NCBI GenBank assembly: GCA_002269645.1 | Contig: NIVC01000866.1 | Coordinates: forward strand, 324,441 to 388,440 | Length of the DNA stretch: 64,000 bases | Reading direction: 5' to 3' | From: Macrostomum lignano | Taxonomy: Eukaryota | Shown: positions 19,450-53,921 of the stretch, in pieces | Numbering within the stretch: the stretch's first letter is position 1 | Layout of the letters: each line of letters opens with the position of its first letter | Made by a program: the position numbers and the translations under genes | Notes under the pieces: model-generated | Told to the model about the DNA's origin: nothing | Seen by the model: the letters and a program-made list of their open reading frames with translations, nothing else | Database searches by the model: none

Positions 19450-19592
19450 AGCTCTAACCCTAAACTCAAGGCACCATTACCCTAACCTAACCCTAAACCC
19501 TAACCCTAACCTAACCTAACCCTGAACCCTAACCCTAAAGCACAAACCCTAACCTAACCCTAAACCCTAAGGCACAAGCACTAACCCTAACC
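19450..19592. repeat. Degenerate (CCCTAA/CCTAA)n telomere-like repeat
   Basis: Read directly; a similar degenerate patch occurs at about 63590-63710. Confidence 0.7.
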
Positions 19593-26185: not shown

Positions 26186-26464
26186 TCTTTGTGATTGTGC
26201 ATCATATGTTAAGACTTGCCAAATGGATTTTACGGACTTCAAGTTCAATTGGTGTTGAGTGTAGACAGATAGCCGGGACTGGCTCAAACTATTTGTCCTT
26301 TGTAGCAGGCTGTTAAGCTTTCGCTGGTTTTCGCAAGACGCATTGACGCAATGTACATTGCTCTCAAGTCTGAACCCCAAAATGGGGAGGAAAAGCCTTT
26401 CAACCCCTTTTCATTCCATTCCCCCACCCCAAGTCTCTCTCAGAGTCTCAGTGTCTCTCTCACC

Positions 26465-30746: not shown

Positions 30747-31344
30747 CTACACTACATTGGGAACTTTAAAGTGCGTGGCGATTGTCAATTGTTCAGGTAT
30801 ACTGGTATACTATACACTATTTTAAAGTGACTTGACAAAATTAGTCATTTAAAGGCACTCATTTTGGCGCTCTGAAAAAAATTATGGCAACGCACTAGAA
30901 CGGATCGAGTAAAAAACAGGAAAACCAAAAGTCCGAGAAATTTTTCAATTGCAAAAGCCTAACATTTTTCCTGCGTGCAAAATTAAAATTCCCTAAAGTG
31001 TATTTCATGTTGCACCATTTTACCTTCAATTTCATTCAAATTCTAATTCACTTTAGACAATATCGGAAGTTCATGCAAATTCGACACTTCAATTTTTGTA
31101 GATGTACATGTACATCTATAAATTCATTTTAGACAAACTCCTTTTCAATATCGACAGCAAGCACAAATTTTTATTGTGAAGAGAGCCTATATGTGGTTGG
31201 CACTGACAAAACTCCATTTATTTTTTGTCGAACTCTGTCGAACTTTTATAAAATCTGATTCACTTTCGTCAGAGTACATCCAAAATCGTCAACGTCAGTT
31301 TGACGATACATAATGAATGTAGAGACTTACATGTATATAGAACT

Positions 31345-32395
31345 CAAGGACTTCTAGACTAACAGGACGTAAAACTCAAAGATCGTGCAGTTTTTTGGAG
31401 GCCACGATTTCCTGGAAAAAATACACTGCGAAGATAGGAAAAAATCAGTTTTTCGTCACAAAATCTGTGATTGTATTTGATCTGGGGCAGTGAAGACTAC
31501 CATTCTTTTAATTTAACATGCACAATATGTTACTCTATTATATTTTCATATAGCTGTGTAGTGAAGTTTTCATTTTCATATTGTTTTCACTTTATTTCAT
31601 AAGCCCAAAGTTGCAAACTCACAAGTGGCATTAGCCAAACTTTTTGTGTTGTTCTTTTTAAAATAAAGTATAAAAACATTGCATGTAGGTACTCTTAGTC
31701 TTAAGCTATTATTGTAGGTTTAGTAACTATACTAATTCCTAGGCCTACTAGAACTAGACCTATCACTACACTATCTAGCCTAATAAGTAATTAAATTTAG
31801 ACAATGACTTAGAGATTAGTATATTTATTTTTTTTTATTATATATAGATTACCAATAAATAGTTTCATATGGTTGGTTACCTAGGCTTGAGAAAGCTGTA
31901 TTATCATTTTTTAAGCCAAGCCTATATTTAGGACTAAGATTTAAGAAGAATAGACTTAATCACAAAAATAGACCCTAACCATTTTTACTAGGTATCTATA
32001 AGAAAAAACGTTGATTAGTCCTTTTATAACTTTTATTTTAAAGGCTAAAAATATTATTATATTACAAATTTGAATAGCTTTTCTTTTCTTGAATTTGATA
32101 TTTGGCTAATGCCACTTGTGAGTTTGCAACTTTGGGCTTATGAAATAAAGTGAAAACAATATGAAAATGAAAACTTCACTACACAGCTATATGAAAATAT
32201 AATAGAGTAACATATTGTGCATGTTAAATTAAAAGAATGGTAGTCTTCACTGCCCCAGATCAAATACAATCACAGATTTTGTGACGAAAAACTGATTTTT
32301 TCCTATCTTCGCAGTGTATTTTTTCCAGGAAATCGTGGCCTCCAAAAAATTGCACAATCTTTGAGTTTTACGTCCTGTTAGTCTAGAAGTCCTTG
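31345..32395. mobile_element. 1051-bp foldback element with 295-bp TIRs (P- or hAT-type termini CAAGG)
   Basis: 31345-31639 is the reverse complement of 32101-32395 with about 2 mismatches; perfect 8-bp TSD ATAGAACT; no internal ORF. Confidence 0.9.
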
Positions 32396-32518
32396 ATAGA
32401 ACTAGCTAGAAGTAACGAAGTTGAACTTCCGATTGTCCAAAGTAAAGTTGAGTTTAAATGAAATGGAAGGTAAAATGCTGTAAAACCCGATGAAAACGGT
32501 ACCCAGACACAGGCCAAA

Positions 32519-33123: not shown

Positions 33124-34079
33124 ATTGCATAATCCTAATTGCACTTCAACTAGCCTTACTGAGTTGTAGGAAATTTAGCGCTGTGAAAGTACATATATTT
33201 GCCATTGCAACAAATTTTATTCAACAACTGATTTATTCCTACTAGGAGTAACAAAATCGTACGTAGGTATTCTTTGATTACCAATATTTTCTTTGCTAAT
33301 TGCTATTTTTTGTTATAATCAACTTCTGATCCCAATACGTAGCGGCCAGCTCTAGCTTAAATGCATGCACATAATTTTAAGTCCACTTCCCTTAAAATGT
33401 ATTTTGAATACAAGACTCTAAAATCACTTTTCTTGTTGCATTGGAGCATACTTTTTCAATTATAGCGAGTTTTTAATTTTAACTGATTTGCATGATTTGC
33501 ATTGATTTGCATGTTTTTCATTTAGCCCTCTTTGATGGAAGTTGCTCGCAAAGTTTACTATAAACTAGCTATTGATTAATTATGTATGACTTGCGTCATA
33601 CTACGAAGCGTCATACATAATACAGAACTTTCACTCTACAGAAGGGCGGAGTCACGCAATTTTTACACTTTGGAGTCTTGGTCAGAAATGCCCTGACATT
33701 CACGAAAACCTGACCCGCATTCACGGTCCCGACTCCCGATGCCATCAGTCGACGACAGTTTACAGGTGGATCGAACAATGCGAGGCGGCCGGCAGTGTGT
33801 TGTCAACTCATCCAAAAGTTAGGGCCCATGATGAGTGGAACAAATCTTGCAGCTGCTGTCTTGCAACTCTGTGCTTGATCAGCTCTACTTGTGGCTTTCT
33901 TCTGAGTGAGCATAGAAGCACAATGCGGTGTGTATTTCTATGGCCAAGGGTATGCGAACAAATGCATGCTGCTTATAGCAGGAAGCACTTATAAAAATTG
34001 GATTTTCGATTTTCGTGGCATGAAAGCTAAAATAAGCCGCTAACTTTTAAGGCATATGATTTTTAAACACACATTAATA

Positions 34080-34303
34080 CACCTTTTCACGTTCAATTTT
34101 GAACAAAGTCCAGTTCTAAAAAAACTAGCGGAAATTCAATTTAGACAATTCCGACTGGGGCAACAAACCCCAGTTCAAAACATTATGCAACCGAAGCAAG
34201 TTTTAGCCATAGACAAAATTGTCCCCAGTCTGAATTGTCTGAATTGAATTTCCGCTAGTTTTTTTAGAACTGGACTTTGTTCAAAATTAAACGTGAAAAG
34301 GTG
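34080..34303. mobile_element. 224-bp MITE with about 85-bp TIRs and a TA target duplication (Tc1/mariner-type)
   Basis: TA|CACCTTTTCACGTT...AACGTGAAAAGGTG|TA; the arms pair over about 85 bp. Confidence 0.8.
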
Positions 34304-35074
34304 TACTCATGGAAGCAAGCAAAAGTGACACTACATACTTCTGGGACACCCCTCGTATTATAATGCAAGGCATTGCGAGAACTAAGTAATGTTTGTGACC
34401 CAATGTTCGTCATGTATACTACATCTATATATGCTCGAACAAATAAAGGTGTAGCGGTACAATAGTTTCTTGTGCTACGAAATACCCCTTCCCACAAAGA
34501 AAAACCCACATGGGAAGGGTTTAAAACTACATAAAATGCTTTACAGTTCAGGTTGGGTGCGTGCAGGCAACGCAGTCTGCGCCACTATGCACTCTATCTA
34601 TAGCTAGGCAACGTGACACACTGTGCACTCCTGCGTGTGGCTGATAAATTGTAAAGCCTCATTAGTTTTACCTAAATCATCTGCCTAACCTAAGCTTTCC
34701 ACAAGCAGCAAAAGGCCAGCATCCTGCCTCAAGTGGAAGCTATACTACACTACTATACTCGCATGCAGATTTGCAAAGGACCCGCCATGAGGGCGTATCT
34801 GTGTAGCACAACTTGCCTTTTCTAATGATTTATAAGCCTGTTGTTAAATAGCAAAATTCTCGCTACAGTACTTTCCTTGTTTTAGAAAAAAAATCTTTCA
34901 AAGCAAGACATCGAGTTGCTCTTGCGATTCATAATGAAGACTTGATGTTCTCCTAGAGAGTGAAGCTAGGGAGGGCTGATGGCGGAGTCCGATGAATGAA
35001 CGTGTCCTGACGAAGTGCGCTTAGCAGACTATGACGCAATGAAAACGGTCCATGTGACACACGTAGACACTGAC

Positions 35075-35852
35075 ACAGATGTGATTTACTACCCTTGACT
35101 CTGAGACAAAGACCTTGTGATTTACTACGCTCGACTCTGACACAAAGACCTTGTGATTTACTACGCTCGACTCTGACACAAAGACCTTGTGATTTACTAC
35201 GCTCGACTCTGACACAAAGACCTTGTGATTTACTACGCTCGACTCTGACACAAAGACCTTGTGATTTACTACGCTCGACTCTGACACAAAGACCTTGTGA
35301 TTTACTACGCTCGACTCTGACACAAAGACCTTGTGATTTACTACACTCGACTCTGACACAAAGACCTTGTGATTTACTACGCTCGACTCTGACACAAAGA
35401 CCTTGTGATTTACTACGCTCGACTCTGACACAAAGACCTTGTGATTTACTACGCTCGACTCTGACACAAAGACCTTGTGATTTACTACGCTCGACTCTGA
35501 CACAAAGACCTTGTGATTTACTACGCTCGACTCTGACACAAAGACCTTGTGATTTACTACGCTCGACTCTGACACAAAGACCTTGTGATTTACTACGCTC
35601 GACTCTGACACAAAGACCTTGTGATTTACTACGCTCGACTCTGACACAAAGACCTTGTGATTTACTACACTCGACTCTGACACAAAGACCTTGTGATTTA
35701 CTACGCTCGACTCTGACACAAAGACCTTGTGATTTACTACGCTCGACTCTGACACAAAGACCTTGTGATTTACTACGCTCGACTCTGACACAAAGACCTT
35801 GTGATTTACTACACTCGACTCTGACACAAAGACCTTGTGATTTACTACGCTC
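35075..35852. repeat. 36-bp minisatellite (CTTGTGATTTACTACGCTCGACTCTGACACAAAGAC), about 21 nearly identical copies
   Basis: Head-to-tail units with no spacers; a single G/A variant in a few units. Confidence 0.97.
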
Positions 35853-35905
35853 GTAGAAACCAGTCTAGTCTAGGGCGTCACATGCAATTACAATTGTCGT
35901 TATCA

Positions 35906-36286
35906 GCGGGGCAGGGATACTGAAATCAATCTTTCTCTTTCGCCAGGGCAACGCTAATCTCGGGATAAAGCAGTTACATCTAGATAATAAGATGGGTTTT
36001 CAATTCAATCAACAGCTTTCTTGCTTACTGACCACATCAGAAAAAATCTAGCTGGGTGAAGATGAACGCAGTGCAATTCATGTTGATGACTGTATTAATC
36101 AGAAAAATTGATGCTCACCAAAAAAACAAGCTGAAATATTAAATTACCATCAAAGGCAGCAAAGCAATACTCGTAAATTGTCAACCCAGGTTTTTCAAAA
36201 GACTTAAGCCCAGATTAAATTTTGCAGAGGCGGCCGAATGGAAAAAAGCATAAATATACGGGCCGCCTCACGACAATCAAGAGCAG
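35906..36286 (+). repeat. 381-bp direct duplication of the GPCR upstream region, left copy
   Basis: Matches 41246-41626 with 2 substitutions seen; abuts the Gypsy LTR at 36287. Confidence 0.92.
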
Positions 36287-36470
36287 TGTAAACTGAGAGA
36301 AGGCGAGAGTTAAGCGAGACCAAAAACACACGAAGTGGCTAAAGCCACGCGCAACGATTTATATATTTGCAATGTACATCAATCAATGTACATCGCGATT
36401 ATTTGCAGATGAATAACTCCGACCCAATAACAACCACACAACAGCGAAAACATTCACGCCTCTTACATCA

Positions 36471-36480
36471 CTCCTTCCCT
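36471..36480 (-). other. Polypurine tract AGGGAAGGAG of the Gypsy element
   Basis: 3 nt before the 3' LTR on the minus strand. Confidence 0.8.
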
Positions 36481-36573
36481 AAATTGAGGATAATAAAAAA
36501 CTGCGAAAAGACAAAAGAGGCAGTAAAACCATGAGAATTAAAAATGCACGAATAGCAAAAATGAACCAGTAAA

Positions 36574-39500
36574 CTAGTTTTGCGCAGCATAAAAATCAGG
36601 CGGTCTTCGAGTCCTTGCAGAACGCCGAGGGCCGACTGCGGTCGGCTCATCCAGCAAGTCCGTCCAGGTCAGCCGCGGATCGACAGCCGGGCTGGGCGGT
36701 CGGCCGGCCTCTGCAGCGGGCGGAGTCGGGGCGGACTGCCAGGAAGCGGGCTGCGGCCGCCTGCGCACGAACAGCTTGAGCCGGTCGTGATGCACCACCG
36801 TGCTTCGTCTCCGGCCGGCGGGTTTTGAGATCCGGTAGGTGACGGGGCTCAGCCTCTCGAGCACGCGGTACGGTCCCAGCCACCGCCGACGGAGAGCCTT
36901 GGACTGGCCCTTCAACACCGCCGGGTTGCTGAGCATCACCAGCTGCCCGACTTGGATCGGCGTGAAGTGCTGGCGCTTGTCGTACTGCTGCTTCCGTGAC
37001 CGCTGTGTCGACTGCAGGCGCTGCCGCACGAGCTGCAAGCCGGTGCGAGCGTCTGCCAGCGTGTCCGTGACGAGCCTCCTTTCGCCGCCTGCAGGTAAAC
37101 TGAGCTCTGCCGGGATCCTGGGGTCACATCCGTGAAGCACTGCGTTGGGCGACCTCTTGGTGGTGCAGTGCGCTGAAGAGTTGTAGGCCCAGATGACGTA
37201 CGGCAGGAAGTCCGCCCATTTGTTCTGCTGTTCCATGCAGTACGCCGCCAGCATGTCGCCTAATGTTCGGTTGAACCGCTCGACTGCAGGGTTGCCGCTG
37301 GGATGGAAGGGTGTCGTTCTTGTCTTGCGAATATCCAGCAGGCGGCACAGCTCTTGGAAGATGTCACTTTCAAACTGACGACCCTGATCGGAGTGGATGA
37401 CTTCGGGCGCTCCGTGGCGAAGAACGACACTCCTTAGCAGCGCATCCGAAACCGTCCGGGCCTCAATGTTGGACACCGCGGTCGCCTCAACCCACTTGGA
37501 AAACACGTCCGTGAAGCAGATGATGTACCTGAGGCCGGCTTCAGTCTCTGGGAGGGGCCCTTTGATGTCCACCTGCACCATCTTCCAAGGAGCTGATGGC
37601 ACGGTGTTGATCTGCAGCGGTGCCCTCTGGTGCTGATGCGGTACCTTGCGACGCTGACACACTTCGCAGCTGCTCACCCAGTGCTGGACGTCGTCCTTTA
37701 GGCCGGGCCACCAAGCTCTGCTGACGACTCTGGCCAGCGTCCTTTCGGTTCCGAGGTGCCCGCTTGCAGGATCGTCGTGCAGCAGCTGCAGCAGGTCCTG
37801 GCGAAGCTGCCGCGGGATGACGGGTTGGCCACTCTTCTTGAGGACGCCATCTTCACCAAGGTCCAGCTTCTCTGTCCTCACCAGGTGTTCTGCGTCATCT
37901 GCAGCCTTGCCACGTCTTGGCCTTTGTCCGAGGAGCACTTGTCGAGCCGCCGCTAGCACTGGGTCGTCAGCCTGCGCTACACGGATGTCGTTGTCCGACC
38001 AGGCAGGGTGCAGCCGGGTCGCCGCTGCTCGGCTCAGTGCGTCCGCAACCACGTTTTCGCGACCAGGTCTGAAGAGCAGCTTGAAGTTGATCTCCTGCAG
38101 AAACGTAATCCATCTGGCTAGCCGGCCTTCTGGCTCCTTGGTGTTGAGCAGCCCTTGCAACGGCTTGTGGTCGGTGAAGACGAGAATTTCGCCAGCGGAC
38201 GCCAAGTAGTTCCGGAAATGCTTCATCGCCCAGACCACCGCAAGAAGCTCTCTGTGGGTAGTCGAATAATTGCGCTCCGCTTTGTTCAGGACTCTCGACG
38301 CGTAGGCTACCGGACACTCTGCATCTTCGTGGAGCTGGCTCAGGACGCCGGCGATGGCCACTCCGCTGCTGTCACAGCACAACCGGAATCCCTTGGAGAA
38401 GTCAGGCAGCTTCAGTACGGGTGGTGTCGACAGAGCTGACTTCAGCTTCCGCAGAGCGTCATCGCACTGAGTTGTCCATTGAAACTGTCGACTCTTCTGA
38501 GTCGCCTGATGAAGCGGATTAGCGATGCTGGCGAAGTGCGGAACGAAACGCCGGTAGAAGCCCAGCATGCCGACAAGCCGGCGAACATCCTCAGCGCATT
38601 CGGGTATCGGGATGGACTGGATAGCGCTGACCTTGTCCTGAGTTGGTCGAATGCCTTCTGCCGAGATTTTGTGTCCTAGGTACTCAACCTCCTGGAAGCA
38701 GAAGTAGCTCTTGCGTTTGTTCAATTTGAGGCCGGCAGACTGCAGTCTTCCCAGGACCTGTTCCAGTGTTTCCGCATGCTTCTCGAAGGTCTGACTAAAC
38801 AGAATCAGATCGTCCATGTACGTGAGCACCTCTGTCCAGTTCAGGCCGGCCATCGTTAGGTCCATCAGGCGCTGAAAGGTTGCCGGGGCGTTGCAGAGGC
38901 CGAACCCGAGTTTCCTGTACTGCATCAGGCCCTGCGTGGTGTAGAAAGCGGTCTTCTCCCGGTCTTGCTCTCGCAGCTCAACCTGCAGGAACCCTTGGCG
39001 GAGGTCAAGAGTGCTGAACCAACTGCCTCCAGTGAGCGCGTCCAGCGCAGCAGACAGCGGAGGCAGCGGGTAGGCGTCCTTCACGGTGCACGAGTTGAGG
39101 GCTCTCCAGTCGGTGCAGATTCGAATCTCGTTGTTTTTCTTTCGCACCACAAGCAGATTACTCGCCCATGGACTGCAGGACGGCTCGATAATCCCGTGAC
39201 GCCGCATCTCGCTAATTTTCTCGTCCACTTGCTGCCGGTAATTCAGGGGAACGGTCCGTTGCCTATGCTTGATGGGGCGACTGCCGGGTTCCAGATTAAT
39301 CTCGTGTTGCAGCAGGTGTGTTGTTCCCAGGTCAAACTCGTGCCTGGCGAATGCCTGCTCTGCCTGGCACAGCAAGGATTCGATGCGCTCGCGCTGCGAC
39401 TCGCTCAGCTCCGGGTTGATGTTAAAGCCAGCTTCCTCTTCACCAGGTTCACCGTCTGCTCCGTTTACTTCTGCAGCGTCGAAGTTGCCGATTGCCTGGT

Positions 39501-40197
39501 TCTGGTAGAGCACCACCGGGTCGGCACTCACGTTGCAGACGCCCACTGGGAGATTTCCGTCTACGCTGGAGACCACCAGAGCCCTGTTTGGCAGCAGGCC
39601 AGTCTTGTCAATAAAATCTGAGCTGGGCTCGAATAGACCCTGCTCGACAGACGATGGCACTTTGACTGGGATGATGACGCGGCTGCGGGCTGGAATGGAC
39701 ACGGTGCTGGCAACTCTGGCAATCACGGCGGTGGGCACCACTCGGCAGGCCTGCGAGGAGCTCCTGTCCGGCAAGATCGAGATCCTGGTTGACCCCAGCT
39801 GGACGGAAGACGCCGGGAGATTGACGCTAAAACTTGAGCACATTTTCCCGATGGCGTCCATACCGAGCACGCATTCCGGCTGAATCCCGGCAACCACCAT
39901 TACCTGGTGCTCCACGGATGGCAGTCCCTCTAGCTGTATCGCTAGCGTTGCACTCGCCGGAGACTCCAAGCGTCGACCATCGATTCCGACCGGAGTGCTG
40001 ATAGGAGGATGAAGCTGAGCATCGACTCCTAGAACTCGAAGCAGCGCAGCTGAAACTAAAGTTACCTGTGCGCCAGTGTCGAACAGCCACCTGCAGGGCC
40101 GGCCAGCAATGCTGCCGGGCAGAAATATTGAGACGGTTTGGGCCTTGCTAGGCAGGGCTGGTGATGGCCCGCGCTCACCAGTCCTCAGAAGTTTCCC
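36574..40197 (-). CDS. pol: Gypsy Pol (protease, RT, RNase H, integrase), probably expressed by -1 frameshift from gag
   Basis: FDTGA protease, YMDD RT, CCDSS RNase H, HHCC integrase zinc finger, DIKGP/HSDQG/VERFN D,D35E triad and GPY motif; uninterrupted ORF. Confidence 0.95.
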   Translation of the reverse strand, partial: GKLLRTGERGPSPALPSKAQTVSIFLPGSIAGRPCRWLFDTGAQVTLVSAALLRVLGVDAQLHPPISTPVGIDGRRLESPASATLAIQLEGLPSVEHQVMVVAGIQPECVLGMDAIGKMCSSFSVNLPASSVQLGSTRISILPDRSSSQACRVVPTAVIARVASTVSIPARSRVIIPVKVPSSVEQGLFEPSSDFIDKTGLLPNRALVVSSVDGNLPVGVCNVSADPVVLYQNQAIGNFDAAEVNGADGEPGEEEAGFNINPELSESQRERIESLLCQAEQAFARHEFDLGTTHLLQHEINLEPGSRPIKHRQRTVPLNYRQQVDEKISEMRRHGIIEPSCSPWASNLLVVRKKNNEIRICTDWRALNSCTVKDAYPLPPLSAALDALTGGSWFSTLDLRQGFLQVELREQDREKTAFYTTQGLMQYRKLGFGLCNAPATFQRLMDLTMAGLNWTEVLTYMDDLILFSQTFEKHAETLEQVLGRLQSAGLKLNKRKSYFCFQEVEYLGHKISAEGIRPTQDKVSAIQSIPIPECAEDVRRLVGMLGFYRRFVPHFASIANPLHQATQKSRQFQWTTQCDDALRKLKSALSTPPVLKLPDFSKGFRLCCDSSGVAIAGVLSQLHEDAECPVAYASRVLNKAERNYSTTHRELLAVVWAMKHFRNYLASAGEILVFTDHKPLQGLLNTKEPEGRLARWITFLQEINFKLLFRPGRENVVADALSRAAATRLHPAWSDNDIRVAQADDPVLAAARQVLLGQRPRRGKAADDAEHLVRTEKLDLGEDGVLKKSGQPVIPRQLRQDLLQLLHDDPASGHLGTERTLARVVSRAWWPGLKDDVQHWVSSCEVCQRRKVPHQHQRAPLQINTVPSAPWKMVQVDIKGPLPETEAGLRYIICFTDVFSKWVEATAVSNIEARTVSDALLRSVVLRHGAPEVIHSDQGRQFESDIFQELCRLLDIRKTRTTPFHPSGNPAVERFNRTLGDMLAAYCMEQQNKWADFLPYVIWAYNSSAHCTTKRSPNAVLHGCDPRIPAELSLPAGGERRLVTDTLADARTGLQLVRQRLQSTQRSRKQQYDKRQHFTPIQVGQLVMLSNPAVLKGQSKALRRRWLGPYRVLERLSPVTYRISKPAGRRRSTVVHHDRLKLFVRRRPQPASWQSAPTPPAAEAGRPPSPAVDPRLTWTDLLDEPTAVGPRRSARTRRPPDFYAAQN
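40140..40197 (-). promoter_or_regulatory. Candidate -1 programmed ribosomal frameshift signal
   Basis: Slippery G GGA AAC in the gag frame (40191-40197), followed by stem CTGGTGA/TCACCAG whose loop GGGCC can pair with downstream GGCCC (H-type pseudoknot). Confidence 0.8.
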
Positions 40198-41027
40198 GAA
40201 GCCGGGGTCGGGCAGACCTCGGCCCGGTGTCCTCTGCCTGAGCAGCGGCTGCACACAGACGGCACAGCTGGAGCGACTTGCTTGCCTGGACACTGAGCAG
40301 CGAAATGACCGGGCTGAGCGCAGTTGAAGCATTTTCCACGGGTGCTGCCTCTTCCACGAGCTGCATTCCTTCTCCCACCGCGCTGTCCTCCGCGGCTGCC
40401 AATGGTGGCGACCGTCGCAGCCAGATCCGCCAACTGCTCTTGCATTTGCTCCAGCCGGTCAGTCACTTGGCTGCTCACCGATGTCACTGCGACGCTTGCC
40501 GGGGCTCCTTTGCTGCCGATGCTCTCCAGCGCTGTGGCGCGGTCTGCCAGCTGTTCAGGACTGCTGCTGTCATAATCCGAAGCTTTCAACAGAGCCTCAC
40601 GGATCTCTGTCGGCAGCAGAGCTAGCAGTCGGTGTCGCACTTCGCAATCTCTCACCGTTTGAGCGTGCTCCGGGCGTGCCTTTCGATACAGAAGCTTGAG
40701 TGCGTAGCACAGCTCCCTCAGCGACTCTCCTTGGCGTCGCTTCCGGCTCTCGAACTCAGACATAGCGCGAAAAGTGTTATCCTTGCCTCTGTAGAACTTG
40801 ACGAGTTCGTCCTTTAAGATCTTGTAGCTGCTCTGTTTGGCCGCTGGCAGGTCCCAGACGAACACGAGGGCTTCACCTGATAGAAGCAGCTTGATCTTGG
40901 ATGCCATCTTGGTGTCGTTCCACTCAGAATCTGCTGCAAAGTCCTCAAACATCTGCAGCCACATGTTGATATCAGTATCGTCTGAGCCAGAAAACTTTGG
41001 CGGTAAAAGTGCATTTGCGTGCGCCAT
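40185..41027 (-). CDS. gag: Gypsy Gag, 280 aa, with two CCHC zinc knuckles
   Basis: PPKFSG capsid-like start; CFNCAQPGHFAAQC and CSRCSGRGHRAEVC. Confidence 0.92.
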   Translation of the reverse strand: MAHANALLPPKFSGSDDTDINMWLQMFEDFAADSEWNDTKMASKIKLLLSGEALVFVWDLPAAKQSSYKILKDELVKFYRGKDNTFRAMSEFESRKRRQGESLRELCYALKLLYRKARPEHAQTVRDCEVRHRLLALLPTEIREALLKASDYDSSSPEQLADRATALESIGSKGAPASVAVTSVSSQVTDRLEQMQEQLADLAATVATIGSRGGQRGGRRNAARGRGSTRGKCFNCAQPGHFAAQCPGKQVAPAVPSVCSRCSGRGHRAEVCPTPASGNF

Positions 41028-41051
41028 AAGTGAGCCGGTTTGCAACTGAGG

Positions 41052-41063
41052 CCGCTGCCACCA
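41052..41063 (-). other. Primer binding site complementary to a tRNA-Leu 3' end
   Basis: TGGTGGCAGCGG 1 nt after the 5' LTR; complementary to ...CCGCUGCCACCA, the usual 3' end of animal tRNA-Leu(AAG/UAG). Confidence 0.85.
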
Positions 41064-41245
41064 ATGTAAACTGAGAGAAGGCGAGAGTTAAGCGAGACCA
41101 AAAACACACGAAGTGGCTAAAGCCACGCGCAACGATTTATATATTTGCAATGTACATCAATCAATGTACATCGCGATTATTTGCAGATGAATAACTCCGA
41201 CCCAATAACAACCACACAACAGCGAAAACATTCACGCCTCTTACA

Positions 41246-41626
41246 GCGGGGCAGGGATACTGAAATCAATCTTTCTCTTTCGCCAGGGCAACGCTAATCT
41301 CGGGATAAAGCAGTTACATCTAGATAATAAGATGGGTTTTCAATTCAATCAACAGCTTTCTTGCTTACTGACCACATCAGAAAAAATCTAGCTGGGTGAA
41401 GATGAACGCAGTGCAATTCATGTTGATGGCTGTATTAATCAGAAAAATTGATGCTCACCAAAAAAACAAGCTGAAATATTAAATTACCATCAAAGGCAGC
41501 AAAGCAATACTCGTAAATTGTCAACCCAGCTTTTTCAAAAGACTTAAGCCCAGATTAAATTTTGCAGAGGCGGCCGAATGGAAAAAAGCATAAATATACG
41601 GGCCGCCTCACGACAATCAAGAGCAG
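41246..41626 (+). repeat. 381-bp direct duplication of the GPCR upstream region, right copy
   Basis: Matches 35906-36286; continues into the 5' leader and ATG of GPCR paralog 2. Confidence 0.92.
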
Positions 41627-41650
41627 CATCTCAGACGCTTTGAGCAAGAC

Positions 41651-42817
41651 ATGGCCAACTCCTCCGCCCCAGAAACGAGCTTCTACGCCAGCCTGAGCAG
41701 CGCCATCGTCGACTGCCTCCCCGATGCGCCCAACCGGCACATCTTCTGTCCGATCAGCACAGCCTACGGAGTTGTGACGGGCCTCCTGCTGCCTCTGGTG
41801 ACGGTTTCCGGTCTGTTCGGTAACTGCGCCACCGTGTGGGTCACGCTGGGTCGCGGAGCCGAGCGCACCAGACTCAACGTCTACCTGGGCGCCATGGCGA
41901 TCGCCGACAGCGCCTACCTGCTCGTGGGTGGCGTACTGAGCCAGTTTCTTCGCCGCGGCCTGCCTTGGATCAGCGGTGGTCAGTTTGGCTTCATTGTAAC
42001 TAACTACTCACCCACTCTGTGCACTGTATACCGATTCGCTGATAAGTGGCTCGGCCTACAGTCGATGTGCATCTTCCTGGCGATGGTGCTGGACCGAGCT
42101 CTGTGTCTGGCCATGCCATTCCGCTTCCAGACGGTCTCGCATCGCACGGCCTGGCGAGTTTGCGGCGTCGCTGTAGCGGCTTCCTTTGCCCTGAGCTCCG
42201 TCTGCCTAGCTGTCTACAGCTGGTATGAGCTTCAGTTCACGCCCAATGCCCCACGACTAATTGTCTGCATGGTTAATTCACACATCGAAGGCTTTGCCAA
42301 AGTACTATTGAGTGTGTACATGCCCCTGTTCCTGAACCCACCGACTCTTCCGGTATTCTGTGTGCTGCTCACGAACTGCTACCTCGCCTGCAAGCTGGTA
42401 GTCATCCTGCGTCAACACCGTCAGCTCTCGTCGTCGCTCACGACAGCTGCTGACGAGAGAGACAAGATGACCAACACGATCGTGTGCGTCGCCATGTCAG
42501 TCCTGCTCACTGTGTGCTCTCTGCCCAGTGTGCTCACCATTCTATCAGGGCAGATCATTGGTCAGCACAGGACAGAGGCGGATGCTCAGCTCCTTCGCGC
42601 TCTGCTAAACATCTCGCAGCTGAGCGAGGCGCTCGTCATCTTCAACCAGAGCGGTAACTGGCTGCTTCTGCTGTGGAAGAGCCCGAGTTACCGACGGAGA
42701 TTTGTGGCTCTGTTCCGACTGGAGCGTTGCAAGCACCGCGGTAGCGGCACTGGTCGTTCCGCGCCAACAGATCCTCTGCCGATGAGCAACCAGGCTAACA
42801 TACCTGGCCGCTTCTGA
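41651..42817 (+). CDS. Intronless rhodopsin-class (7TM) orphan GPCR, paralog 2, 388 aa
   Basis: N-terminal NSS sequon; GLFGN (TM1), LGAMAIADS (TM2), VLDRALCLAMPF (DRY-like), LPxFC TM5, CSLP (TM6) and NQSGNW..KSPSYR (TM7/helix 8). Confidence 0.92.
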   Translation: MANSSAPETSFYASLSSAIVDCLPDAPNRHIFCPISTAYGVVTGLLLPLVTVSGLFGNCATVWVTLGRGAERTRLNVYLGAMAIADSAYLLVGGVLSQFLRRGLPWISGGQFGFIVTNYSPTLCTVYRFADKWLGLQSMCIFLAMVLDRALCLAMPFRFQTVSHRTAWRVCGVAVAASFALSSVCLAVYSWYELQFTPNAPRLIVCMVNSHIEGFAKVLLSVYMPLFLNPPTLPVFCVLLTNCYLACKLVVILRQHRQLSSSLTTAADERDKMTNTIVCVAMSVLLTVCSLPSVLTILSGQIIGQHRTEADAQLLRALLNISQLSEALVIFNQSGNWLLLLWKSPSYRRRFVALFRLERCKHRGSGTGRSAPTDPLPMSNQANIPGRF

Positions 42818-43659
42818 AATGACTTGCGGAAAAATCGGATGAGCCGTTGTCAAATGTCACTGACCTGAACTCATTTTGCTTGTTGTGTCGCTTTTGCTGT
42901 ATTAGTTGTGGCTATTCGATCAAGAATTCTATTTTATGTCAGAAACTGAAGGAACTAGTTTAATCGGCCATCAAAAAGAAAGAATGCATTATGCTTGTTG
43001 TAATGAACAGCAATAGTTGGTTCAAGCTTGACGGTAGTTTTTCAGTAGTATGAGTGTTTGTTCACGTAGCTATCACCCAAATGTTTCGTCCTAAACTTTA
43101 AAATTAAGCTCACCAATAACCACTGTCTTATTGCTGTAGTATGTCGTCTCCAGTTCCCGCCCTCAGTTTTAAAAACCCGTGTACTACACCTACTCTTTAG
43201 ATTACAGCCGAACTCTTCAGTAACTGTTTGAACCTCGGTACAACAAAACAGCATTGTAAGTAAATTGAACGCGACATCTGGACTTTATTTTTCAATATCA
43301 CCTGCTTTCGCACCAGCTAGAATGCATACCCGAAATTACCAGTAATTTTTAGCACAAGTTTTTGCCCCGGCATCATATTTTGATTGTGTTGGTCTTTCAT
43401 CATTTTATAGTACCGAGTATTATTTTTTTCGTTTATTGCCTCCCCGAGTAAGACTGGCAGTGTGTAACTCAAATAATTTTGGACTCACTCGGATTTAAAC
43501 ATGTGCCCTTCACACCGCAATGATCTCCCCACAGACCCGATAATTCGCCCTAGCGAAATAGCGAAAGTAGCGAAATAGCCCTAATTAGTGCTGTGAGCCA
43601 CGCTAAAGGCCTCACTACTGTTGGATCAAAACCTAGCGGCTTTTGAATAGTAGACCGTT

Positions 43660-47010: not shown

Positions 47011-47732
47011 TGCCAGAAAATAAACGTTTTAAATATCATTCGGTCCTGAGCAAAGGTAAAACCTATATCGACTTATTTGCATTGACTCGCTGATTGAGTG
47101 AATCCATCAGTTCATCACTGAGCTGCAAAATCTCAAGCATAGTATAGAACAGCGACGCCTTCGAATGCTAGAAGGTTCCTCAGTCTACTACAGGAATGAC
47201 TTCAAAGAGTGAAATGTAGCGGGAATCGGGAACCGGCCCTTCAACTTAGATAAACTGCTTCCTGACTACATAGGCGCATAGACGCTATCTGCGAATCATA
47301 ATCGAAATTCCCAACAGCTTCCGAAATAACAACAGCTAACCAGCAGCAATGATTCGATACATAAACACCCTCCTAGTTATTAGAATCAATTTAGCTGCAT
47401 CCAAGTGTCAATTATGAAGTGCCTACCTGGGCACTTGGAGGCGTCTCCATTTGGATCTTGTTACTGATTACCCAAGCGTTTCTGTGCAGCAGTTGATGTC
47501 GTTGCAGTACTAGTCGTCGCTTTGGATATATCAAGAAAGTTAATGCTCAAGAAAAGGCAACTGAGAAACTATTAAATTACCATCAAAGGCAGCAAAGCAA
47601 TAATCTTTTGATTTTTTCACAAGACTTAAGCCTAGATCCAATTTCGCAGAGGTGGCCGAATGGAAAAAAGCATAAATATACGGGCCGCCTCACGACAATC
47701 AAGAGCAGCATCTTAGACGCTTTGAGCAAGAC

Positions 47733-48899
47733 ATGGCCAACTCCTCCGCCCCAGAAACGAGCTTCTACGCCAGCCTGAGCAGCGCCATCGTCGACTGCCT
47801 CCCCGAGGCGCCCAACCGGCACATCTTCTGTCCGATCAGCACAGCCTACGGAGTTGTGACGGGCCTCCTGCTGCCTCTGGTGACGGTGTCCGGTCTGTTC
47901 GGTAACTGCGCCACCGTGTGGGTCACGCTGGGTCGCGGAGCCGAGCGCACTCGACTCAATGTCTACCTGGGCGCCATGGCGATCGCCGACAGCGCCTACC
48001 TGCTCGTGGGTGGCGTACTGAGCCAGTTTCTTCGCCGCGGCCTGCCTTGGATCAGCGGTGGTCAGTTTGGCTTCATTGTAACTAACTACTCACCCACTAT
48101 GTGCACTGTATACCGATTCGCTGATAAGTGGCTCGGCCTACAGTCGATGTGCATCTTCCTGGCGATGGTGCTGGACCGAGCTCTGTGTCTGGCCATGCCG
48201 TTCCGCTTCCAGACGGTCTCGCATCGCACGGCCTGGCGAGTTTGCGGCGTCGATGTAGCGGCTTCCTTTGCCCTGAGCTCCGTCTGCCTGGCTGTCTACA
48301 GCTGGTATGAGCTTCAGTTCACGCCCAATGCCCCACGACTAATTGTCTGCATGGTTAATTCACACATCGAAGGCTTTGCCAAAGTACTATTGAGTGTGTA
48401 CATGCCCCTGTTCCTGAACCCACCGACCCTTCCGGTATTCTGTGTGCTGCTCACGAACTGCTACCTCGCCTGCAAGCTGGTCGCCATCCTGCGTCAACAC
48501 CGTCAGCTCTCGTCGTCGCTCACGACAGCTGCTGACGAGAGAGACAAGATGACCAACACGATCGTGTGCGTCGCCATGTCAGTCCTGCTCACTGTGTGCT
48601 CTCTGCCCAGTGTGCTCACCATTCTATCAGGGCAGATCATTGGTCAGCACAGGACAGAGGCGGATGCTCAGCTCCTTCGCGCTCTGCTAAACATCTCGCA
48701 GCTGAGCGAGGCGCTCGTCATCTTCAACCAGAGCGGTAACTGGCTGCTTCTGCTGTGGAAGAGCCCGAGTTACCGACGGAGATTTGTGGCTCTGTTCCGA
48801 CTGGAGCGTTGCAAGCACCGCGGTAGCGGCACTGGTCGTTCCGCGCCAACAGATCCTCTGCCGATGAGCAACCAGGCTAACATACCTGGCCGCTTCTGA
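47733..48899 (+). CDS. Intronless rhodopsin-class orphan GPCR, paralog 3, 388 aa
   Basis: About 12 nt and 4 aa differences from paralog 2 (D25E, L123M, A174D, V251A). Confidence 0.9.
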   Translation: MANSSAPETSFYASLSSAIVDCLPEAPNRHIFCPISTAYGVVTGLLLPLVTVSGLFGNCATVWVTLGRGAERTRLNVYLGAMAIADSAYLLVGGVLSQFLRRGLPWISGGQFGFIVTNYSPTMCTVYRFADKWLGLQSMCIFLAMVLDRALCLAMPFRFQTVSHRTAWRVCGVDVAASFALSSVCLAVYSWYELQFTPNAPRLIVCMVNSHIEGFAKVLLSVYMPLFLNPPTLPVFCVLLTNCYLACKLVAILRQHRQLSSSLTTAADERDKMTNTIVCVAMSVLLTVCSLPSVLTILSGQIIGQHRTEADAQLLRALLNISQLSEALVIFNQSGNWLLLLWKSPSYRRRFVALFRLERCKHRGSGTGRSAPTDPLPMSNQANIPGRF

Positions 48900-49464: not shown

Positions 49465-49621
49465 TAAAAATCTGATCTATAACTTTATGTCATATTATAC
49501 ATTGAAGGAACTGGTTTAATCGACCATCTAAGTAAGTATGCAATATGCTTGTTGTTAATGAAAAAATTAAGTAGCTACGAGCGTAGTTCAACCAAAACGT
49601 AGTTTTTCAGTAGCTAGTATT

Positions 49622-49905
<284 letters not shown>

Positions 49906-49980
49906 GTGTTTGTACACGTACGTAGCTATCAAGTAACTGTTTCGTCTTAAACTTTAAGTCGAAATTCACCAATAACCACA

Positions 49981-50035: not shown

Positions 50036-50354
50036 TAACCACCCTATTGTTGCTGTAGTGTGTCGTCTCCAGTTCCCGCCCTCAGCTTAAAAACTCAGCT
50101 ACGAGCTACCCTACCAAACTAAGGGTAGCTTACCCTATAGATTGCAGCCGAGCTCTGTTGCTTGAACTTTGGTACAACAAAACTGACTTTTCAACGCAAC
50201 AACTGGACTTTTTACTTTAATATCACATGCTTTGGCACCAGCAAAAATGCATAGTCAAGATTATAACTGAAGTAAATTGAGCACCAGTTTTTGTCATGGC
50301 ATCATATCGATTGTGCTTGTCTTTGATTATTTTATAACACAGGAGTATCATGAC

Positions 50355-51010
50355 AGCATCAGTATCAGCATCAGTATCAGTATCAGTATCAGCATCAGCA
50401 TCAGTATCAGTATCAGTATCAGCATCAGCATCAGCATCAGTATCAGTATCAGTATCAGTATCAGTATCAGTATCAGCATCAGCATCAGCATCAGTATCAG
50501 TATCAGCATCAGTATCAGTATCAGTATCAGTATCAGCATCAGCATCAGTATCAGTATCAGTATCAGCATCAGCATCAGCATCAGCATCAGTATCAGTATC
50601 AGCATCAGCATCAGTATCAGTATCAGTATCAGTATCAGTATCAGCATCAGCATCAGTATCAGCATCAGCATCAGCATCAGCATCAGCATCAGTATCAGCA
50701 TCAGCATCAGTATCAGTATCAGTATCAGCATCAGTATCAGCATCAGTATCAGCATCAGCATCAGCATCAGCATCAGTATCAGTATCAGTATCAGCATCAG
50801 TATCAGCATCAGCATCAGTATCAGTATCAGCATCAGCATCAGTATCAGCATCAGTATCAGTATCAGTATCAGCATCAGTATCAGCATCAGCATCAGTATC
50901 AGTATCAGTATCAGTATCAGCATCAGCATCAGTATCAGTATCAGTATCAGCATCAGTATCAGCATCAGTATCAGTATCAGTATCAGTATCAGCATCAGCA
51001 TCAGCATCAG
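50355..51010. repeat. (ATCAG[T/C])n hexanucleotide microsatellite, left part
   Basis: Read directly. Confidence 0.97.
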
Positions 51011-53921
51011 CCCAGTGTCCGCATTGTCGGAATAATGCCGGAATATTATGCCAGCATCATGCCAGACTGAATGTCGCGACGAGATCCAGGCATTATGTTA
51101 GCATGAAGTGCCAGTATAATGCTGCTTTTATGCCGACTATATGCGACTGATATGCCTGTTCAATTATGTAGTTAACCAATGTACTTCGTAGCATTGTGGC
51201 TGCATTGTTGAAATAATGCTGGCATATCATGCCAGACTGAATGTCGCGACAGGATCCAGGCATTATGTTAGCATGAAATGCCAGTGTAATGCTGCTTTTA
51301 TGCCGACTATATGCGACTGATATGCCTGTTCAATTATATAGTAAACCAATGTACGTCGTAGCTTTCTGTGGCTTATAAATAATGCAATTGTTGTCCAATT
51401 ATTACAATGAAGCACTTAACCCTTTTTGAACTCCACAAGGCTTTAATTAGGCTTTAGGAAATGGTACAAAAGAACTAAATAAAAGTGTATTGTAAAAAAG
51501 ACGGCGCAGAAAAGTATTTTTTTAACATTGAAAACAATGGTAGGAACATGTTTTTAGTTCTTTAATTCTTTTATAATTTAACTTAAATAGTAACTTAAAT
51601 AGCATGGGAAAACAGAAACATAACAACATAAAAATATAAACAGAATATAGCAACAAAAACAACATACAAAAGTTATAAGCAGATACTTCTTTAAAAGATA
51701 GGGTCCCAAATACAGCAAAGAGTCTGAATTCTGTTGCCTTAAAATGAGAAAGCTTGGTATCAAATTGCCTTGGCCGTCACTGAAACTCATTTGGTATAAA
51801 TTTCGCCAAAGAAATCGACTTTTCAGACAGCTCAGCCAAAGCAGTTGGGTATAATTTACAACGAAGACGAAAACACTTTACAGTGGAGAAAAAACTTTAA
51901 CAATTGGCGAACAACTCCCAAACAAACAGAATGTTAGTAATCAACAGGGAAACCAGACTGCAAGTTTGCATTGTCAATGAGTGGCGAAATCTGCAGTTGG
52001 TTATTCTCAAGACCAGATTTGTAGTCCGCATCTGTTCTTTTAATGCCTACAAAAGTTTTGTAAACCACCCTATCTTCAGCGAAACTTCTTCAACCTTGAC
52101 AGTAATTGCATCCCAGCTTCGAAGCATGTGACTTTGAATTTGCATTGTTCAAATTGAATGCTCATCTCATCTGAAATAAGAAATAATGCATAAATTGGAC
52201 TTTAGATAACATGTTTATTTGGCTTTTAACTCCCACTTACAAACTTTTCTTTTTTCAATTCCCATAGTCTTCTCCTCTCCTTTCTACCACTTATATAGTT
52301 GTCTAATATATATCTATCATTCTTTTCCAATCCCTGTCTTTCCTTCTCTTAGAATCTTAGATAAACTGACTATTAAGGAAGAAAATACTTAATACTACTC
52401 AATACTTAATATTTAATATTATATACTATAGAATATCTTCCCAATTGGCATAGAATTATGTAGATAATGCTGCTCCTAGTCCTAGTCTTATCCACATAGT
52501 AAACTAATAAAATTGATTGATCTTTGTCAATATATACCATGAAAATAATGTCCCTCTTTAATAACATGCTATACTTGCAATATATAAAAATATTAAACTA
52601 CACATTAACATAATACACTGCATATTAACTGCTTTTGCTATATTTAATATTGTATCAATATATCATATTTAGACATTTAATCATGAAAATATCATGAACA
52701 TTACAATATAAAAAATAAAAAATTAGAATTTAAAAAGCCATAATAAAGTCTTAAACTATGATGGAAAAAATATATTTATCACATTTTTAATATTGCTAAA
52801 TAATTGATATTCAATTTAAATTTTTTGTTTATAGAATTTATAGATAAGTACTTTACTATAAGTAGACCTCTTAAAGGCTTAAGTGTCCCAGTAAATAAAA
52901 TAGTTAAGAAACTAGAAAAAGCCTATTGTCTGATTTCAACATTTGTTTCATTGATTTAGATAAAACTTAAAATTAGTTTTATCCTTTTTTGACAACTGAA
53001 AATGTAATTGTTTGCTATTTGCAATATAAAATACAAGGAACAGTATTATATCATATCATATTTTAACAGCAATTTATACAACAAAGCAACTAAAGACTGG
53101 TGTATATAAAATATGACAAGTACAATATTTCACATAGGCCTATGCCTATAGAGCCTAGGCTAGTACATTAACATATATAACTTCGTAATATCATATACAG
53201 CCTTAGAAAATTGTCAGACTGCACCCACTACTATTGCTAGAAACTAATATACAAATGCCTTGTTAGAAAAGGTATTTTTCTGCGCATACATATAAAAGCC
53301 AGTACAATTGATCGAGACAGACTAGGCCTAAGACTCGTAAAGCATCAATTAAAAATGTGCTATATTTTTGTTCAATATTGTTCAATATTTAGTATTATAA
53401 CAAAAAATAAAAACATGTATAACTACTATAGCCAAAAGATAACATAGCTTAAAATAAACCATCTAAATATTACTTGTATGACTACTATTTGTAGTCCATT
53501 CAGTATATATAAGAAACATGTACAATTCAAATTATATCAAATCGACGAAATGAACAAGCATTTGCATGCTGTATATATGCGAAAATTATGAAGACAGTAA
53601 AATTTGTCAATGGGTATCTTTGAAGACTATTATCAATTTGGGACTATTCAGGAACCTGCATAAAATCTTTTCCTTCTAAATTTCTCAAAGTCATATTTTT
53701 AGCACTTAATGTCTTAATTGTGCCGTGGCATGCACAGGCCAAATTTATTCCAGTTTGATGCTGCGCCTAAAAAAGAAAGAATTGCTGGCGAAACTGAAAG
53801 CACTTTCAATAAATATCAAACAGATATCAATGCAACACAAATTTGGAATTTTTTTGCTTGTCAAAAATATGCTGACGCGTCAGCATAATTACGGCATAAT
53901 GCTGACATCATGGACACTGGG
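51011..53921 (-). mobile_element. Defective CMC/EnSpm (CACTA-superfamily) DNA transposon, 2911 bp
   Basis: Terminal CCCAGTGTCC / GGACACTGGG extending into an imperfect TIR of about 40 bp; AG 2-bp duplication; subterminal repeats. Minus-strand transposase relic at about 51675-52030 (RTD..SPL..FPVDY*HSVCLGV; IPNEF.RPR; KATEFR; LLYLGP). Confidence 0.8.

What the first reader, a model, noticed from the sequence alone, without database searches (positions are those of the whole stretch)
35906..41626. Intact Gypsy element flanked by a 381-bp duplication of the GPCR promoter instead of a 4-6-bp TSD
Seen: the immediate flanks (GAGCAG| and |GCGGGG) do not match, but 35906-36286 and 41246-41626 are direct repeats with 2 substitutions while the LTRs are identical. 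The left junction is about 30 nt downstream of the TATA-like box, near the expected TSS. Inference: unequal recombination between two independent insertions 381 bp apart on different alleles or paralogs, or an aberrant one-ended integration. As a result, GPCR paralog 2 keeps its promoter and an orphan copy points antisense into the element, which could generate silencing RNAs.
Basis: partly seen in the sequence, partly recalled or inferred. Interest (0 to 1): 0.72.

Follow-up and report, generated by a model that had tools for sequence, protein, structure and literature searches.

The report
Gypsy retrotransposon with 381-bp target duplication
A young, intact Gypsy-type retrotransposon in the flatworm Macrostomum lignano is flanked by a 381-bp duplication of a receptor gene's upstream region instead of its family's usual 4-bp one; this is most likely a rare mis-integration of a kind already known from retroviruses.

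Summary
Windows 35906-36286 and 41246-41626 are 381-bp direct repeats with 2 substitutions. They abut a 4959-bp Ty3/Gypsy element on the minus strand (36287-41245) that has identical 181-bp LTRs and intact gag and pol.

The window is Macrostomum lignano Mlig_3_7, NIVC01000866.1. A second contig, NIVC01002971.1, carries the same junctions and the same duplication, so a one-off misassembly is unlikely.

Five other insertion sites of the same family all have ordinary 4-bp duplications. This copy is therefore the exception in its family (1 of 6 sites).

My best explanation (about 0.55) is a single aberrant integration. The two LTR ends joined the target 381 bp apart with a 5' stagger, and repair then duplicated the interval. 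Retroviruses give precedents: experimental HIV/ASLV events, and natural HERV-K loci with 96-450-bp duplications.

The main rival (about 0.25) is two ordinary insertions 381 bp apart on homologues, followed by crossover inside the element. The sequence alone cannot separate the two.

GPCR2 keeps 381 bp of upstream sequence, and the orphan copy points antisense into the element. Promoter activity and silencing RNAs are untested.

Verdict: a new member of a known kind, of moderate interest.

The parts
35906..36286 (+). A1: upstream (orphan) copy of the 381-bp duplicated GPCR2 upstream segment. It ends exactly at the LTR.
   Evidence: 381 bp with 2 substitutions against 41246-41626
36250..36258 (+). 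TATA-like ATAAATATA in A1, 28-36 nt upstream of the junction. It points into the element in antisense.
   Evidence: read directly; promoter function is inferred, not shown
36287..36467 (-). 3' LTR (181 bp, TG...CA) of the minus-strand element
36468..36480 (-). Polypurine-tract-like AGGGAAGGAGTGA next to the 3' LTR
   Evidence: read directly; inferred function
36574..40332 (-). pol ORF, 1252 aa: protease, reverse transcriptase, RNase H, integrase (zinc-binding, core, p58-type C-terminal domains)
   Evidence: 99% identical to M. lignano PAA84541.1
40185..41027 (-). gag ORF (ATG at 41027) with a CCHC zinc knuckle. It overlaps pol by 148 nt, and pol is in the -1 frame.
41046..41063 (-). Primer-binding-site-like TGGTGGCAGCGGCCTCAG, 1 nt from the 5' LTR
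   Evidence: read directly; no tRNA gene in the window to match it against
41065..41245 (-). 5' LTR, identical to the 3' LTR
41246..41626 (+). A2: the copy of the duplicated segment still joined to GPCR2 (the ancestral arrangement). It has a TATA-like box at 41590-41598.
   Evidence: GPCR3 upstream is continuous across the A|D boundary
41651..42817 (+). GPCR2, an intact 388-aa rhodopsin-family receptor ORF. Its ATG lies 25 nt after the end of A2.
47530..47732 (+). Upstream region of paralogue GPCR3, homologous to A positions 193-381 and onward. It serves as an 'empty-site' analogue for the downstream junction.
35066..35853 (.). 36-bp minisatellite ending 52 bp upstream of the duplication (context only): 21 units here, 9 in the sister contig

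Best explanation
This is one aberrant integration of a normal, young Ty3/Gypsy retrotransposon. The two processed LTR ends did not attack the two target strands 4 bp apart. Instead they became joined to opposite strands 381 bp apart, with the usual 5' stagger.

The element's U3-end 3'-CA joined the window's plus strand at 35905|35906. The U5-end 3'-CA joined the minus strand at 36286|36287 of the pre-insertion sequence. Either integrase made both joins, or integrase made one and host repair completed the other. In the second case the free CA-3' end would prime on the 'CA' at 35904-05.

Fill-in or repair synthesis of the 381-nt single-stranded stretches then left one copy of the GPCR2 upstream segment on each side.

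What is shown: the structure itself, precise TG...CA ends, the family's normal 4-bp duplication, and the ancestral A2-GPCR2 contiguity.

What is inferred: that it was a single event, and which end was aberrant.

Consequences, all inferred:
- GPCR2 keeps its proximal 381 bp including the TATA-like box.
- An orphan copy of that segment faces antisense into the element.
- Recombination between the two 381-bp repeats could excise the element precisely.
For: - Both LTR termini are complete and abut the repeat with no filler, exactly as in the other copies.
- The same family makes 4-bp duplications at five other sites: GCTG, GTAC, GCTA, GTTG and GTCT. So this is an exception within the family, not a family trait.
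- The polarity (plus strand cut on the left, minus strand cut on the right) is what a 5'-staggered integration with a stretched stagger would give (sequence).
- There is a 2-nt 'CA' overlap at the right junction.
- Published precedents exist. Aberrant HIV integrations most commonly duplicate flanking host DNA by 'hundreds or thousands of bp', with one end inserted by integrase and the other by the host (PMC5041404). Natural HERV-K(HML-2) loci have 96-, 111-, 206-, 250- and 450-bp duplications, about 5 of 451 sites, and empty alleles were confirmed for two of them (PMC5488345).
- The five other sites show no common regional target: one in a minisatellite, one beside a microsatellite, one inside a gene, two intergenic. 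Two independent hits within 381 bp are therefore a priori very rare.
- The divergence between A1 and A2 (1-2/381) is compatible with the LTR divergence (0/181), so a common age is possible.
Against: - No pre-integration allele was retrieved, so single-copy ancestry of the segment is only partly shown. A paralogue covers the downstream boundary only.
- Precise ends at both junctions are equally natural for two ordinary insertions.
- Both junction 4-mers, a|GCGG and a|GCAG on the plus strand, fit the family's target motif W|GYNN in register. That is what two complete ordinary integrations would leave. A lone half-site join or a host-mediated join would match only by chance (about 0.06 each). The motif rests on n = 5 and was defined post hoc.
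- Wild-type retroviral integrase rarely does this (0/99 and 0/85 in PMC5041404).
Confidence: 0.55

Rival explanations
1. Two ordinary insertions of the same family occurred in the same orientation, 381 bp apart, on two homologues or sister chromatids. One was at 35905|35906 (4-bp duplication GCGG) and one at the end of the segment (GCAG). A crossover inside the 5-kb element then produced U-A-element-A-D, plus a reciprocal product in which the 381 bp are deleted.
For: - The element lacks matching short duplications, and both ends are precise.
- Both putative 4-bp targets fit the family motif W|GYNN in register on the plus strand. The joint chance is about 0.004, though with n = 5 reference sites.
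- The LTR sequence of this copy is identical to that of two other copies, L006 and L007, so two source-identical insertions are feasible.
- One A1/A2 difference (36089/41429) is shared by both contigs and could be an allelic SNP captured at the crossover.
Against: - It needs two rare hits within 381 bp, in the same orientation and in trans, plus a crossover. No regional targeting is seen at the five other sites.
- The motif at both sites lies on the strand opposite to the element, whereas all five ordinary copies have it in element orientation. Read in element orientation, the two sites score -4.4 and -4.2 bits.
- No parental or reciprocal allele was found among the 10 loci examined, although two annotated copies (P0124 and P0126) were not examined.
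- Piecewise comparison with nine other copies shows no clear two-parent mosaic, though the family is too uniform for this to be informative.
- A crossover between subgenomes is disfavoured: 0.26-0.52% divergence between copies against 1.4-2.2% between subgenomes.
Confidence: 0.25
2. The element is a recombinant of two insertions in neighbouring tandem GPCR units. One sat at the 5' UTR of a now-lost paralogue and the other upstream of GPCR2. Recombination between the two elements deleted everything in between, so A1 and A2 would be paralogous promoters rather than a duplication made at insertion. A related variant is insertion into a pre-existing tandem duplication.
For: - GPCR genes here form a tandem array with a 6082-bp period.
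- Deletion by recombination between elements is a well-documented fate of LTR elements (established knowledge).
Against: - A1 and A2 are 99.5% identical over 381 bp. The nearest surviving paralogue promoter (GPCR3) shares only the last 189 bp at about 82-91% identity with indels.
- It still needs two insertions.
- For the pre-existing duplication variant, no 4-bp duplication is present at the junction. It would need an exact hit on the duplication joint, plus either a 4-bp loss or a specific point change.
Confidence: 0.06
3. Assembly artefact: a chimeric join, made inside the element, between two haplotypes that each carry one ordinary insertion.
For: - Mlig_3_7 is a difficult, redundant assembly of a polyploid genome with known errors (PMC5730564; PMC10733133).
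- The element is a 5-kb, near-identical repeat.
Against: - The same junctions and duplication occur on a second contig, NIVC01002971.1. That contig differs by 12 minisatellite units, a 1-nt indel and a few SNPs, so it was built from other reads.
- There are no Ns in the window.
- The assembly used 130x PacBio with Canu, and the structure spans only 5.7 kb.
- An artefact would still require two real insertions 381 bp apart.
Confidence: 0.04

Closest known systems
HERV-K(HML-2) loci with unusually long target-site duplications (Mamedov et al. 2004; Kahyo et al. 2017, PMC5488345)
   Same: An LTR element or provirus is flanked directly by 96-450-bp direct repeats of single-copy host DNA at 99-100% identity. 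This occurs at about 1% of loci in a family that otherwise makes short duplications. The authors also note that recombination between the long repeats could regenerate the empty site.
   Different: Those are vertebrate betaretrovirus-like proviruses, mostly solo LTRs, with a normal duplication of 5-6 bp. Here the element is an env-less Ty3/Gypsy retrotransposon of a flatworm, full-length, with identical LTRs and a 4-bp family norm. No empty allele has yet been seen.
Experimental aberrant retroviral integrations (ASLV vectors with a defective end; HIV with suboptimal integrase inhibitors or weakened integrase; PMC5041404)
   Same: One end is inserted by integrase and the other is joined nearby by host enzymes. 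The commonest outcome is a flanking host duplication of hundreds to thousands of bp. The polarity argument is the same.
   Different: In those experiments the aberrant end is often truncated or carries extra sequence, whereas here both ends are complete. Nothing is known about integrase impairment in this case.
Recombinant LTR retrotransposons without matching duplications (unequal recombination between elements, described in Arabidopsis and rice)
   Same: An intact element whose immediate flanks do not match.
   Different: The classic product deletes the interval between two elements on one chromosome. Producing a duplication needs the trans configuration and the reciprocal product, which is rarely documented.
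Very long target duplications of non-LTR elements (rotifer R9, 126 bp; Chlamydomonas Dualen; cited in PMC9977147)
   Same: The duplication length equals the distance between the two strand breaks.
   Different: Those use target-primed reverse transcription by endonucleases, and the long duplication is a family trait. This is neither integrase-mediated nor an exception in those families.

Membership tests
Ty3/Gypsy (Metaviridae) LTR retrotransposon | Direct long terminal repeats ending TG...CA | tested here: met
   181-bp identical LTRs, TGTAA...TTACA
Ty3/Gypsy (Metaviridae) LTR retrotransposon | gag with a zinc knuckle, and pol in the order protease - RT - RNase H - integrase | tested here: met
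   Pfam hits in that order, all above curated cut-offs. pol is in the -1 frame relative to gag.
Ty3/Gypsy (Metaviridae) LTR retrotransposon | Primer-binding site and polypurine tract next to the LTRs | tested here: inconclusive
   A TGG-starting 18-mer lies 1 nt from the 5' LTR and a purine-rich 13-mer lies at the 3' LTR. No tRNA was available to match.
Ty3/Gypsy (Metaviridae) LTR retrotransposon | Short (4-6 bp) target-site duplication | tested here: not met
   This copy has no matching short flanks and a 381-bp duplication instead. The family itself meets the feature: 4 bp at five other sites.
Long-target-duplication / aberrant integrase-type insertion | Long direct repeat of host DNA abutting both complete LTR ends, with no filler | tested here: met
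Long-target-duplication / aberrant integrase-type insertion | The pre-integration allele carries the repeated segment once | tested here: inconclusive
   Only a paralogue (GPCR3) was available. It is continuous across the downstream boundary, and no comparator covers the upstream boundary. The GPCR proteins are not on record, so other alleles could not be fetched.
Long-target-duplication / aberrant integrase-type insertion | Origin in a single integration event | not testable with these tools
   Needs population or subgenome haplotypes, or raw reads.
Unequal crossover product of two insertions | Existence of parental single-insertion alleles or of the reciprocal deletion allele | tested here: inconclusive
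   None were found among 10 loci (6 sites) of the family in Mlig_3_7.
Unequal crossover product of two insertions | The element is a mosaic of two parental lineages | tested here: inconclusive
   Piecewise mismatch counts against 9 copies show no clear switch. The family is only 0.3-0.8% divergent.
Promoter-targeting Tf1/Tf2-like elements | Insertions concentrated in promoters across copies | tested here: not met
   The other sites are a 22-bp minisatellite, the flank of a microsatellite, the inside of a gene, and intergenic DNA 1.8 kb from a gene. Integrase_p58_C is above its cut-off, but the SH3_Tf2-1 hit is below it.

The most novel reading that the evidence does not exclude
The aberrant outcome is tied to a 'wrong-way' engagement of the integration complex. 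All five ordinary copies sit on an asymmetric target motif (W|GYNN) in element orientation. This copy has the motif in register at both junctions but on the opposite strand. That would suggest that when the complex meets its asymmetric target inverted, the concerted 4-bp reaction fails, and the two ends are joined at two separate motif instances about two nucleosome repeats apart.

The resulting 381-bp duplication would then have functional consequences:
- it preserves the GPCR2 core promoter;
- it provides an orphan promoter that feeds antisense transcripts of an active element into the piRNA pathway;
- it makes the insertion precisely reversible by repeat-repeat recombination.
Probability: 0.1. 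Interest if true: 0.65.

Novelty: new member of a known kind. Interest (0 to 1): 0.4.

Why it matters
This is a clean natural example, outside vertebrate retroviruses, of an integrase-type element with a duplication of hundreds of base pairs. The element is full-length with identical LTRs, and there is a within-family baseline of 4 bp.

Three points follow:
- Pipelines that require a 4-6-bp duplication will misclassify or mis-date such copies.
- A retrotransposon can land at a transcription start site without removing the gene's proximal promoter.
- Such an insertion can in principle be removed precisely by homologous recombination, which blurs inference of 'empty' versus 'reverted' alleles.

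M. lignano has long-read, RAMPAGE and piRNA data and three subgenomes. The single-event versus two-event question and the antisense-promoter idea are therefore directly testable in this species.

Tried and rejected
**Dead ends**
- Looking up GPCR2 and GPCR3 proteins to fetch other alleles: neither is on record. The GPCR homology search returned nothing at E <= 1e-10.
- tRNA scan to match the primer-binding site: no tRNA genes in the window.
- Polarising the two substitutions with the GPCR3 paralogue: that region is too diverged or deleted.
- An ungapped comparison of the two contigs was meaningless because of indels. It was replaced by BLAST and MAFFT comparisons.
- Mosaic test of the element against nine other copies, done in 500-bp pieces: uninformative.

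**Interpretations rejected**
- Insertion into a pre-existing tandem duplication: there is no 4-bp duplication at the joint. GCAG and GCGG match 3/4, but that is explained by the shared motif.
- The 381-bp segment as an LTR of another element, or as part of a composite LTR: it does not run TG...CA, the order of parts is wrong, and it is continuous with the GPCR 5' region in a paralogue.
- Reading 'identical LTRs versus 2 changes in the duplication' as an age difference: not significant.
- Solo LTRs or further copies in the window: none.


Full report
**Observation.** The structure is exactly as described. Windows 35906-36286 and 41246-41626 are 381-bp direct repeats that differ at two positions: 36089 A / 41429 G and 36190 G / 41530 C. 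Between them lies a 4959-bp element (36287-41245) with two identical 181-bp LTRs running TG...CA. The immediate flanks...GAGCAG| and |GCGGGG..., do not form a 4-6-bp duplication. A TATA-like ATAAATATA lies 28-36 nt upstream of the left junction and recurs in the right copy, 53-61 nt before the GPCR2 ATG. The repeat formally extends two more bases because the LTR's terminal CA matches the CA at 35904-05. The contrast 'LTRs identical, duplication has 2 changes' is not significant (Fisher p = 1).

**The element.** It lies on the minus strand. gag (ATG at 41027, CCHC knuckle) overlaps pol (36574-40332, 1252 aa), which is in the -1 frame. pol carries protease, reverse transcriptase, RNase H and integrase domains in Ty3/Gypsy order. 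A TGG-starting primer-binding-like site and a purine-rich tract lie next to the LTRs. No other copy or solo LTR is present in the window. No full sequence was printed or assembled.

**Where the window comes from.** The pol protein is 99% identical to Macrostomum lignano proteins. The exact protein maps to GCA_002269645.1 contig NIVC01000866.1, and the fetched locus is the reverse complement of window 34074-42832. The window is therefore NIVC01000866.1:324441-388440 of the Mlig_3_7 assembly. That assembly was built with Canu from 130x PacBio, polished with Pilon, from the inbred polyploid DV1 line, and has much redundancy (PMC5730564).

**A second copy of the locus.** Contig NIVC01002971.1 (L003) has the same two junctions and the same 381-bp duplication. 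In unique sequence it is more than 99.9% identical to the window. The differences are:
- 2 substitutions in the element;
- 9 rather than 21 units of the adjacent 36-bp minisatellite;
- a 1-nt deletion in GPCR2;
- only one of the two A1/A2 differences, so 36089/41429 is shared and 36190/41530 is private to the window contig.

M. lignano subgenomes differ by 1.4-2.2% (PMC10733133), so these two contigs are allelic or within-subgenome variants. Two separate sets of reads support the structure. It is also younger than the subgenome split, so the other subgenome copies should still carry the empty site. I could not fetch those copies because the GPCR genes are not annotated.

**The family baseline.** I fetched nine further loci of the same pol cluster. 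They represent five other insertion sites. All five have perfect 4-bp duplications and identical or near-identical LTRs:

| Duplication | Contigs | Note |
|---|---|---|
| GCTG | 1 | |
| GTAC | 3 | |
| GCTA | 2 | inside a 22-bp minisatellite |
| GTTG | 1 | |
| GTCT | 1 | |

None has a long flanking repeat other than the minisatellite it sits in. The 381-bp duplication is therefore an exception (1 of 6 sites), not a family property. The sites share no obvious regional feature, and none is clearly a promoter.

**Ancestral arrangement.** The paralogue GPCR3 (47733-48899) has upstream sequence homologous to A positions 193-381. It runs uninterrupted across the point where A1 meets the LTR. So A2 plus GPCR2 is the original arrangement, and A1's right end is an insertion junction. 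No comparator exists for the upstream boundary.

**Mechanism.** Every scenario must explain two integrase-type junctions (complete TG...CA, no filler) placed 381 bp apart, with the plus strand joined on the left and the minus strand on the right.

(b) A single aberrant integration with a stretched 5' stagger does this in one step. There are precedents:
- In HIV and ASLV experiments, one-ended integration completed by host enzymes most often duplicates flanking host DNA by hundreds to thousands of bp (PMC5041404).
- Natural HERV-K(HML-2) loci carry 96-450-bp duplications at about 1% of sites, and empty alleles have been confirmed for two (PMC5488345).
- The CA overlap at the right junction fits priming by a processed CA-3' end.

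(a) Two ordinary insertions on homologues followed by crossover within the element give the same product. This needs two same-orientation hits within 381 bp in a family with roughly a dozen annotated copies and no visible targeting, which is a much lower prior.

**An observation that cuts the other way.** The five ordinary sites share an asymmetric motif, W|GYNN, in element orientation. Both junction 4-mers of this copy fit that motif in register, as a|GCGG and a|GCAG, but on the strand opposite to the element. The joint chance is about 0.004, with only five reference sites and a motif defined post hoc. Two complete ordinary integrations would leave in-register motifs. The inverted orientation, however, fits neither model simply. 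I record it as unexplained.

Other tests:
- A piecewise comparison with nine other copies shows no two-parent mosaic, but the family is too uniform (0.3-0.8%) for this to count.
- Crossover between subgenomes or between paralogous promoters is disfavoured by the 99.5% identity of the copies.
- Insertion into a pre-existing tandem duplication is rejected because no 4-bp duplication sits at the joint.

My weights are:

| Scenario | Weight |
|---|---|
| Single aberrant integration | 0.55 |
| Two insertions plus crossover | 0.25 |
| Paralogue or pre-duplication variants | 0.06 |
| Assembly artefact | 0.04 |
| Unassigned | remainder |

**Consequences (inferred).**
- GPCR2 retains 381 bp of proximal upstream sequence including the TATA-like box. 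The minisatellite and everything further upstream are displaced by 5.3 kb.
- The orphan copy A1 is oriented on the plus strand, towards the 3' LTR of a minus-strand element.
- The two 381-bp repeats could recombine to excise the element precisely.

None of these is tested. GPCR2 is not even annotated in the transcriptome-based GenBank record, so its expression is doubtful. In the sister contig its reading frame is broken.

**Comparison and novelty.** This works like the long-duplication HERV-K loci and the aberrant retroviral integrations. It is a bona fide Ty3/Gypsy element in everything except the duplication length of this one copy. My full-text searches turned up no report of a duplication of hundreds of bp flanking a Ty3/Gypsy retrotransposon. 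The nearest was median 23-26-bp duplications for three Drosophila families in a preprint. I therefore rate it a new member of a known kind, of moderate interest.

Noticed in passing
window 35905-35909 and 36282-36286; loci L002, L004, L006, L007, L009 junctions: The family's five ordinary insertion sites share an asymmetric target motif, W|GYNN, in element orientation. At the 381-bp-duplication copy the motif is present in register at both junctions, but on the opposite strand.
   Followed up: partly
window 35066-35853: A 36-bp minisatellite ends 52 bp upstream of the duplication. It has 21 units here and 9 in the sister contig NIVC01002971.1.
   Followed up: partly
window 17140-17727, 41651-42817, 47733-48899, 55464-56728: A tandem array of four rhodopsin-type GPCR paralogues. 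Two are intact at 388 aa, one is truncated at 195 aa and one is split into two ORFs. None is on record as an annotated protein. GPCR2 and GPCR3 lie 6082 bp apart.
   Followed up: partly
L003 (NIVC01002971.1), equivalent of window 41805: The sister contig has a 1-nt deletion in a TTT run of GPCR2, giving a stop at codon 95. This is either a real pseudogenising allele or a residual long-read error.
   Followed up: partly
window 31344-31639 and 32101-32396: Inverted repeat with 296-nt arms, 99% complementary, 461 nt apart. It looks foldback- or MITE-like.
   Followed up: no
window 24317-26380 (-): A 687-aa ORF with a DUF4371 domain, probably a transposase-derived gene or a DNA-transposon remnant.
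   Followed up: no
window 7412-8023 (-), 10338-11267 (-), 21689-22171 (-): Two ankyrin-repeat ORFs and a ribosomal protein L7/L30-type ORF (probably exons of host genes).
   Followed up: no
window 936-2105, 3077-3411, 4350-5034, 5600-7116, 10052-10363, 12806-13129, 19580-20514, 49552-49923, 50217-51150, 57397-58077: Numerous minisatellite arrays with periods of 8, 12/18, 14-15, 20, 21, 24, 29 and 46 bp. This agrees with the reported 15% tandem-repeat content of this genome.
   Followed up: no
L004, L005, L010 (NIVC01000165.1, NIVC01001004.1, NIVC01000006.1): The same insertion (GTAC duplication, identical flanks) is present on three contigs. This illustrates the threefold redundancy of the DV1 assembly.
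   Followed up: partly
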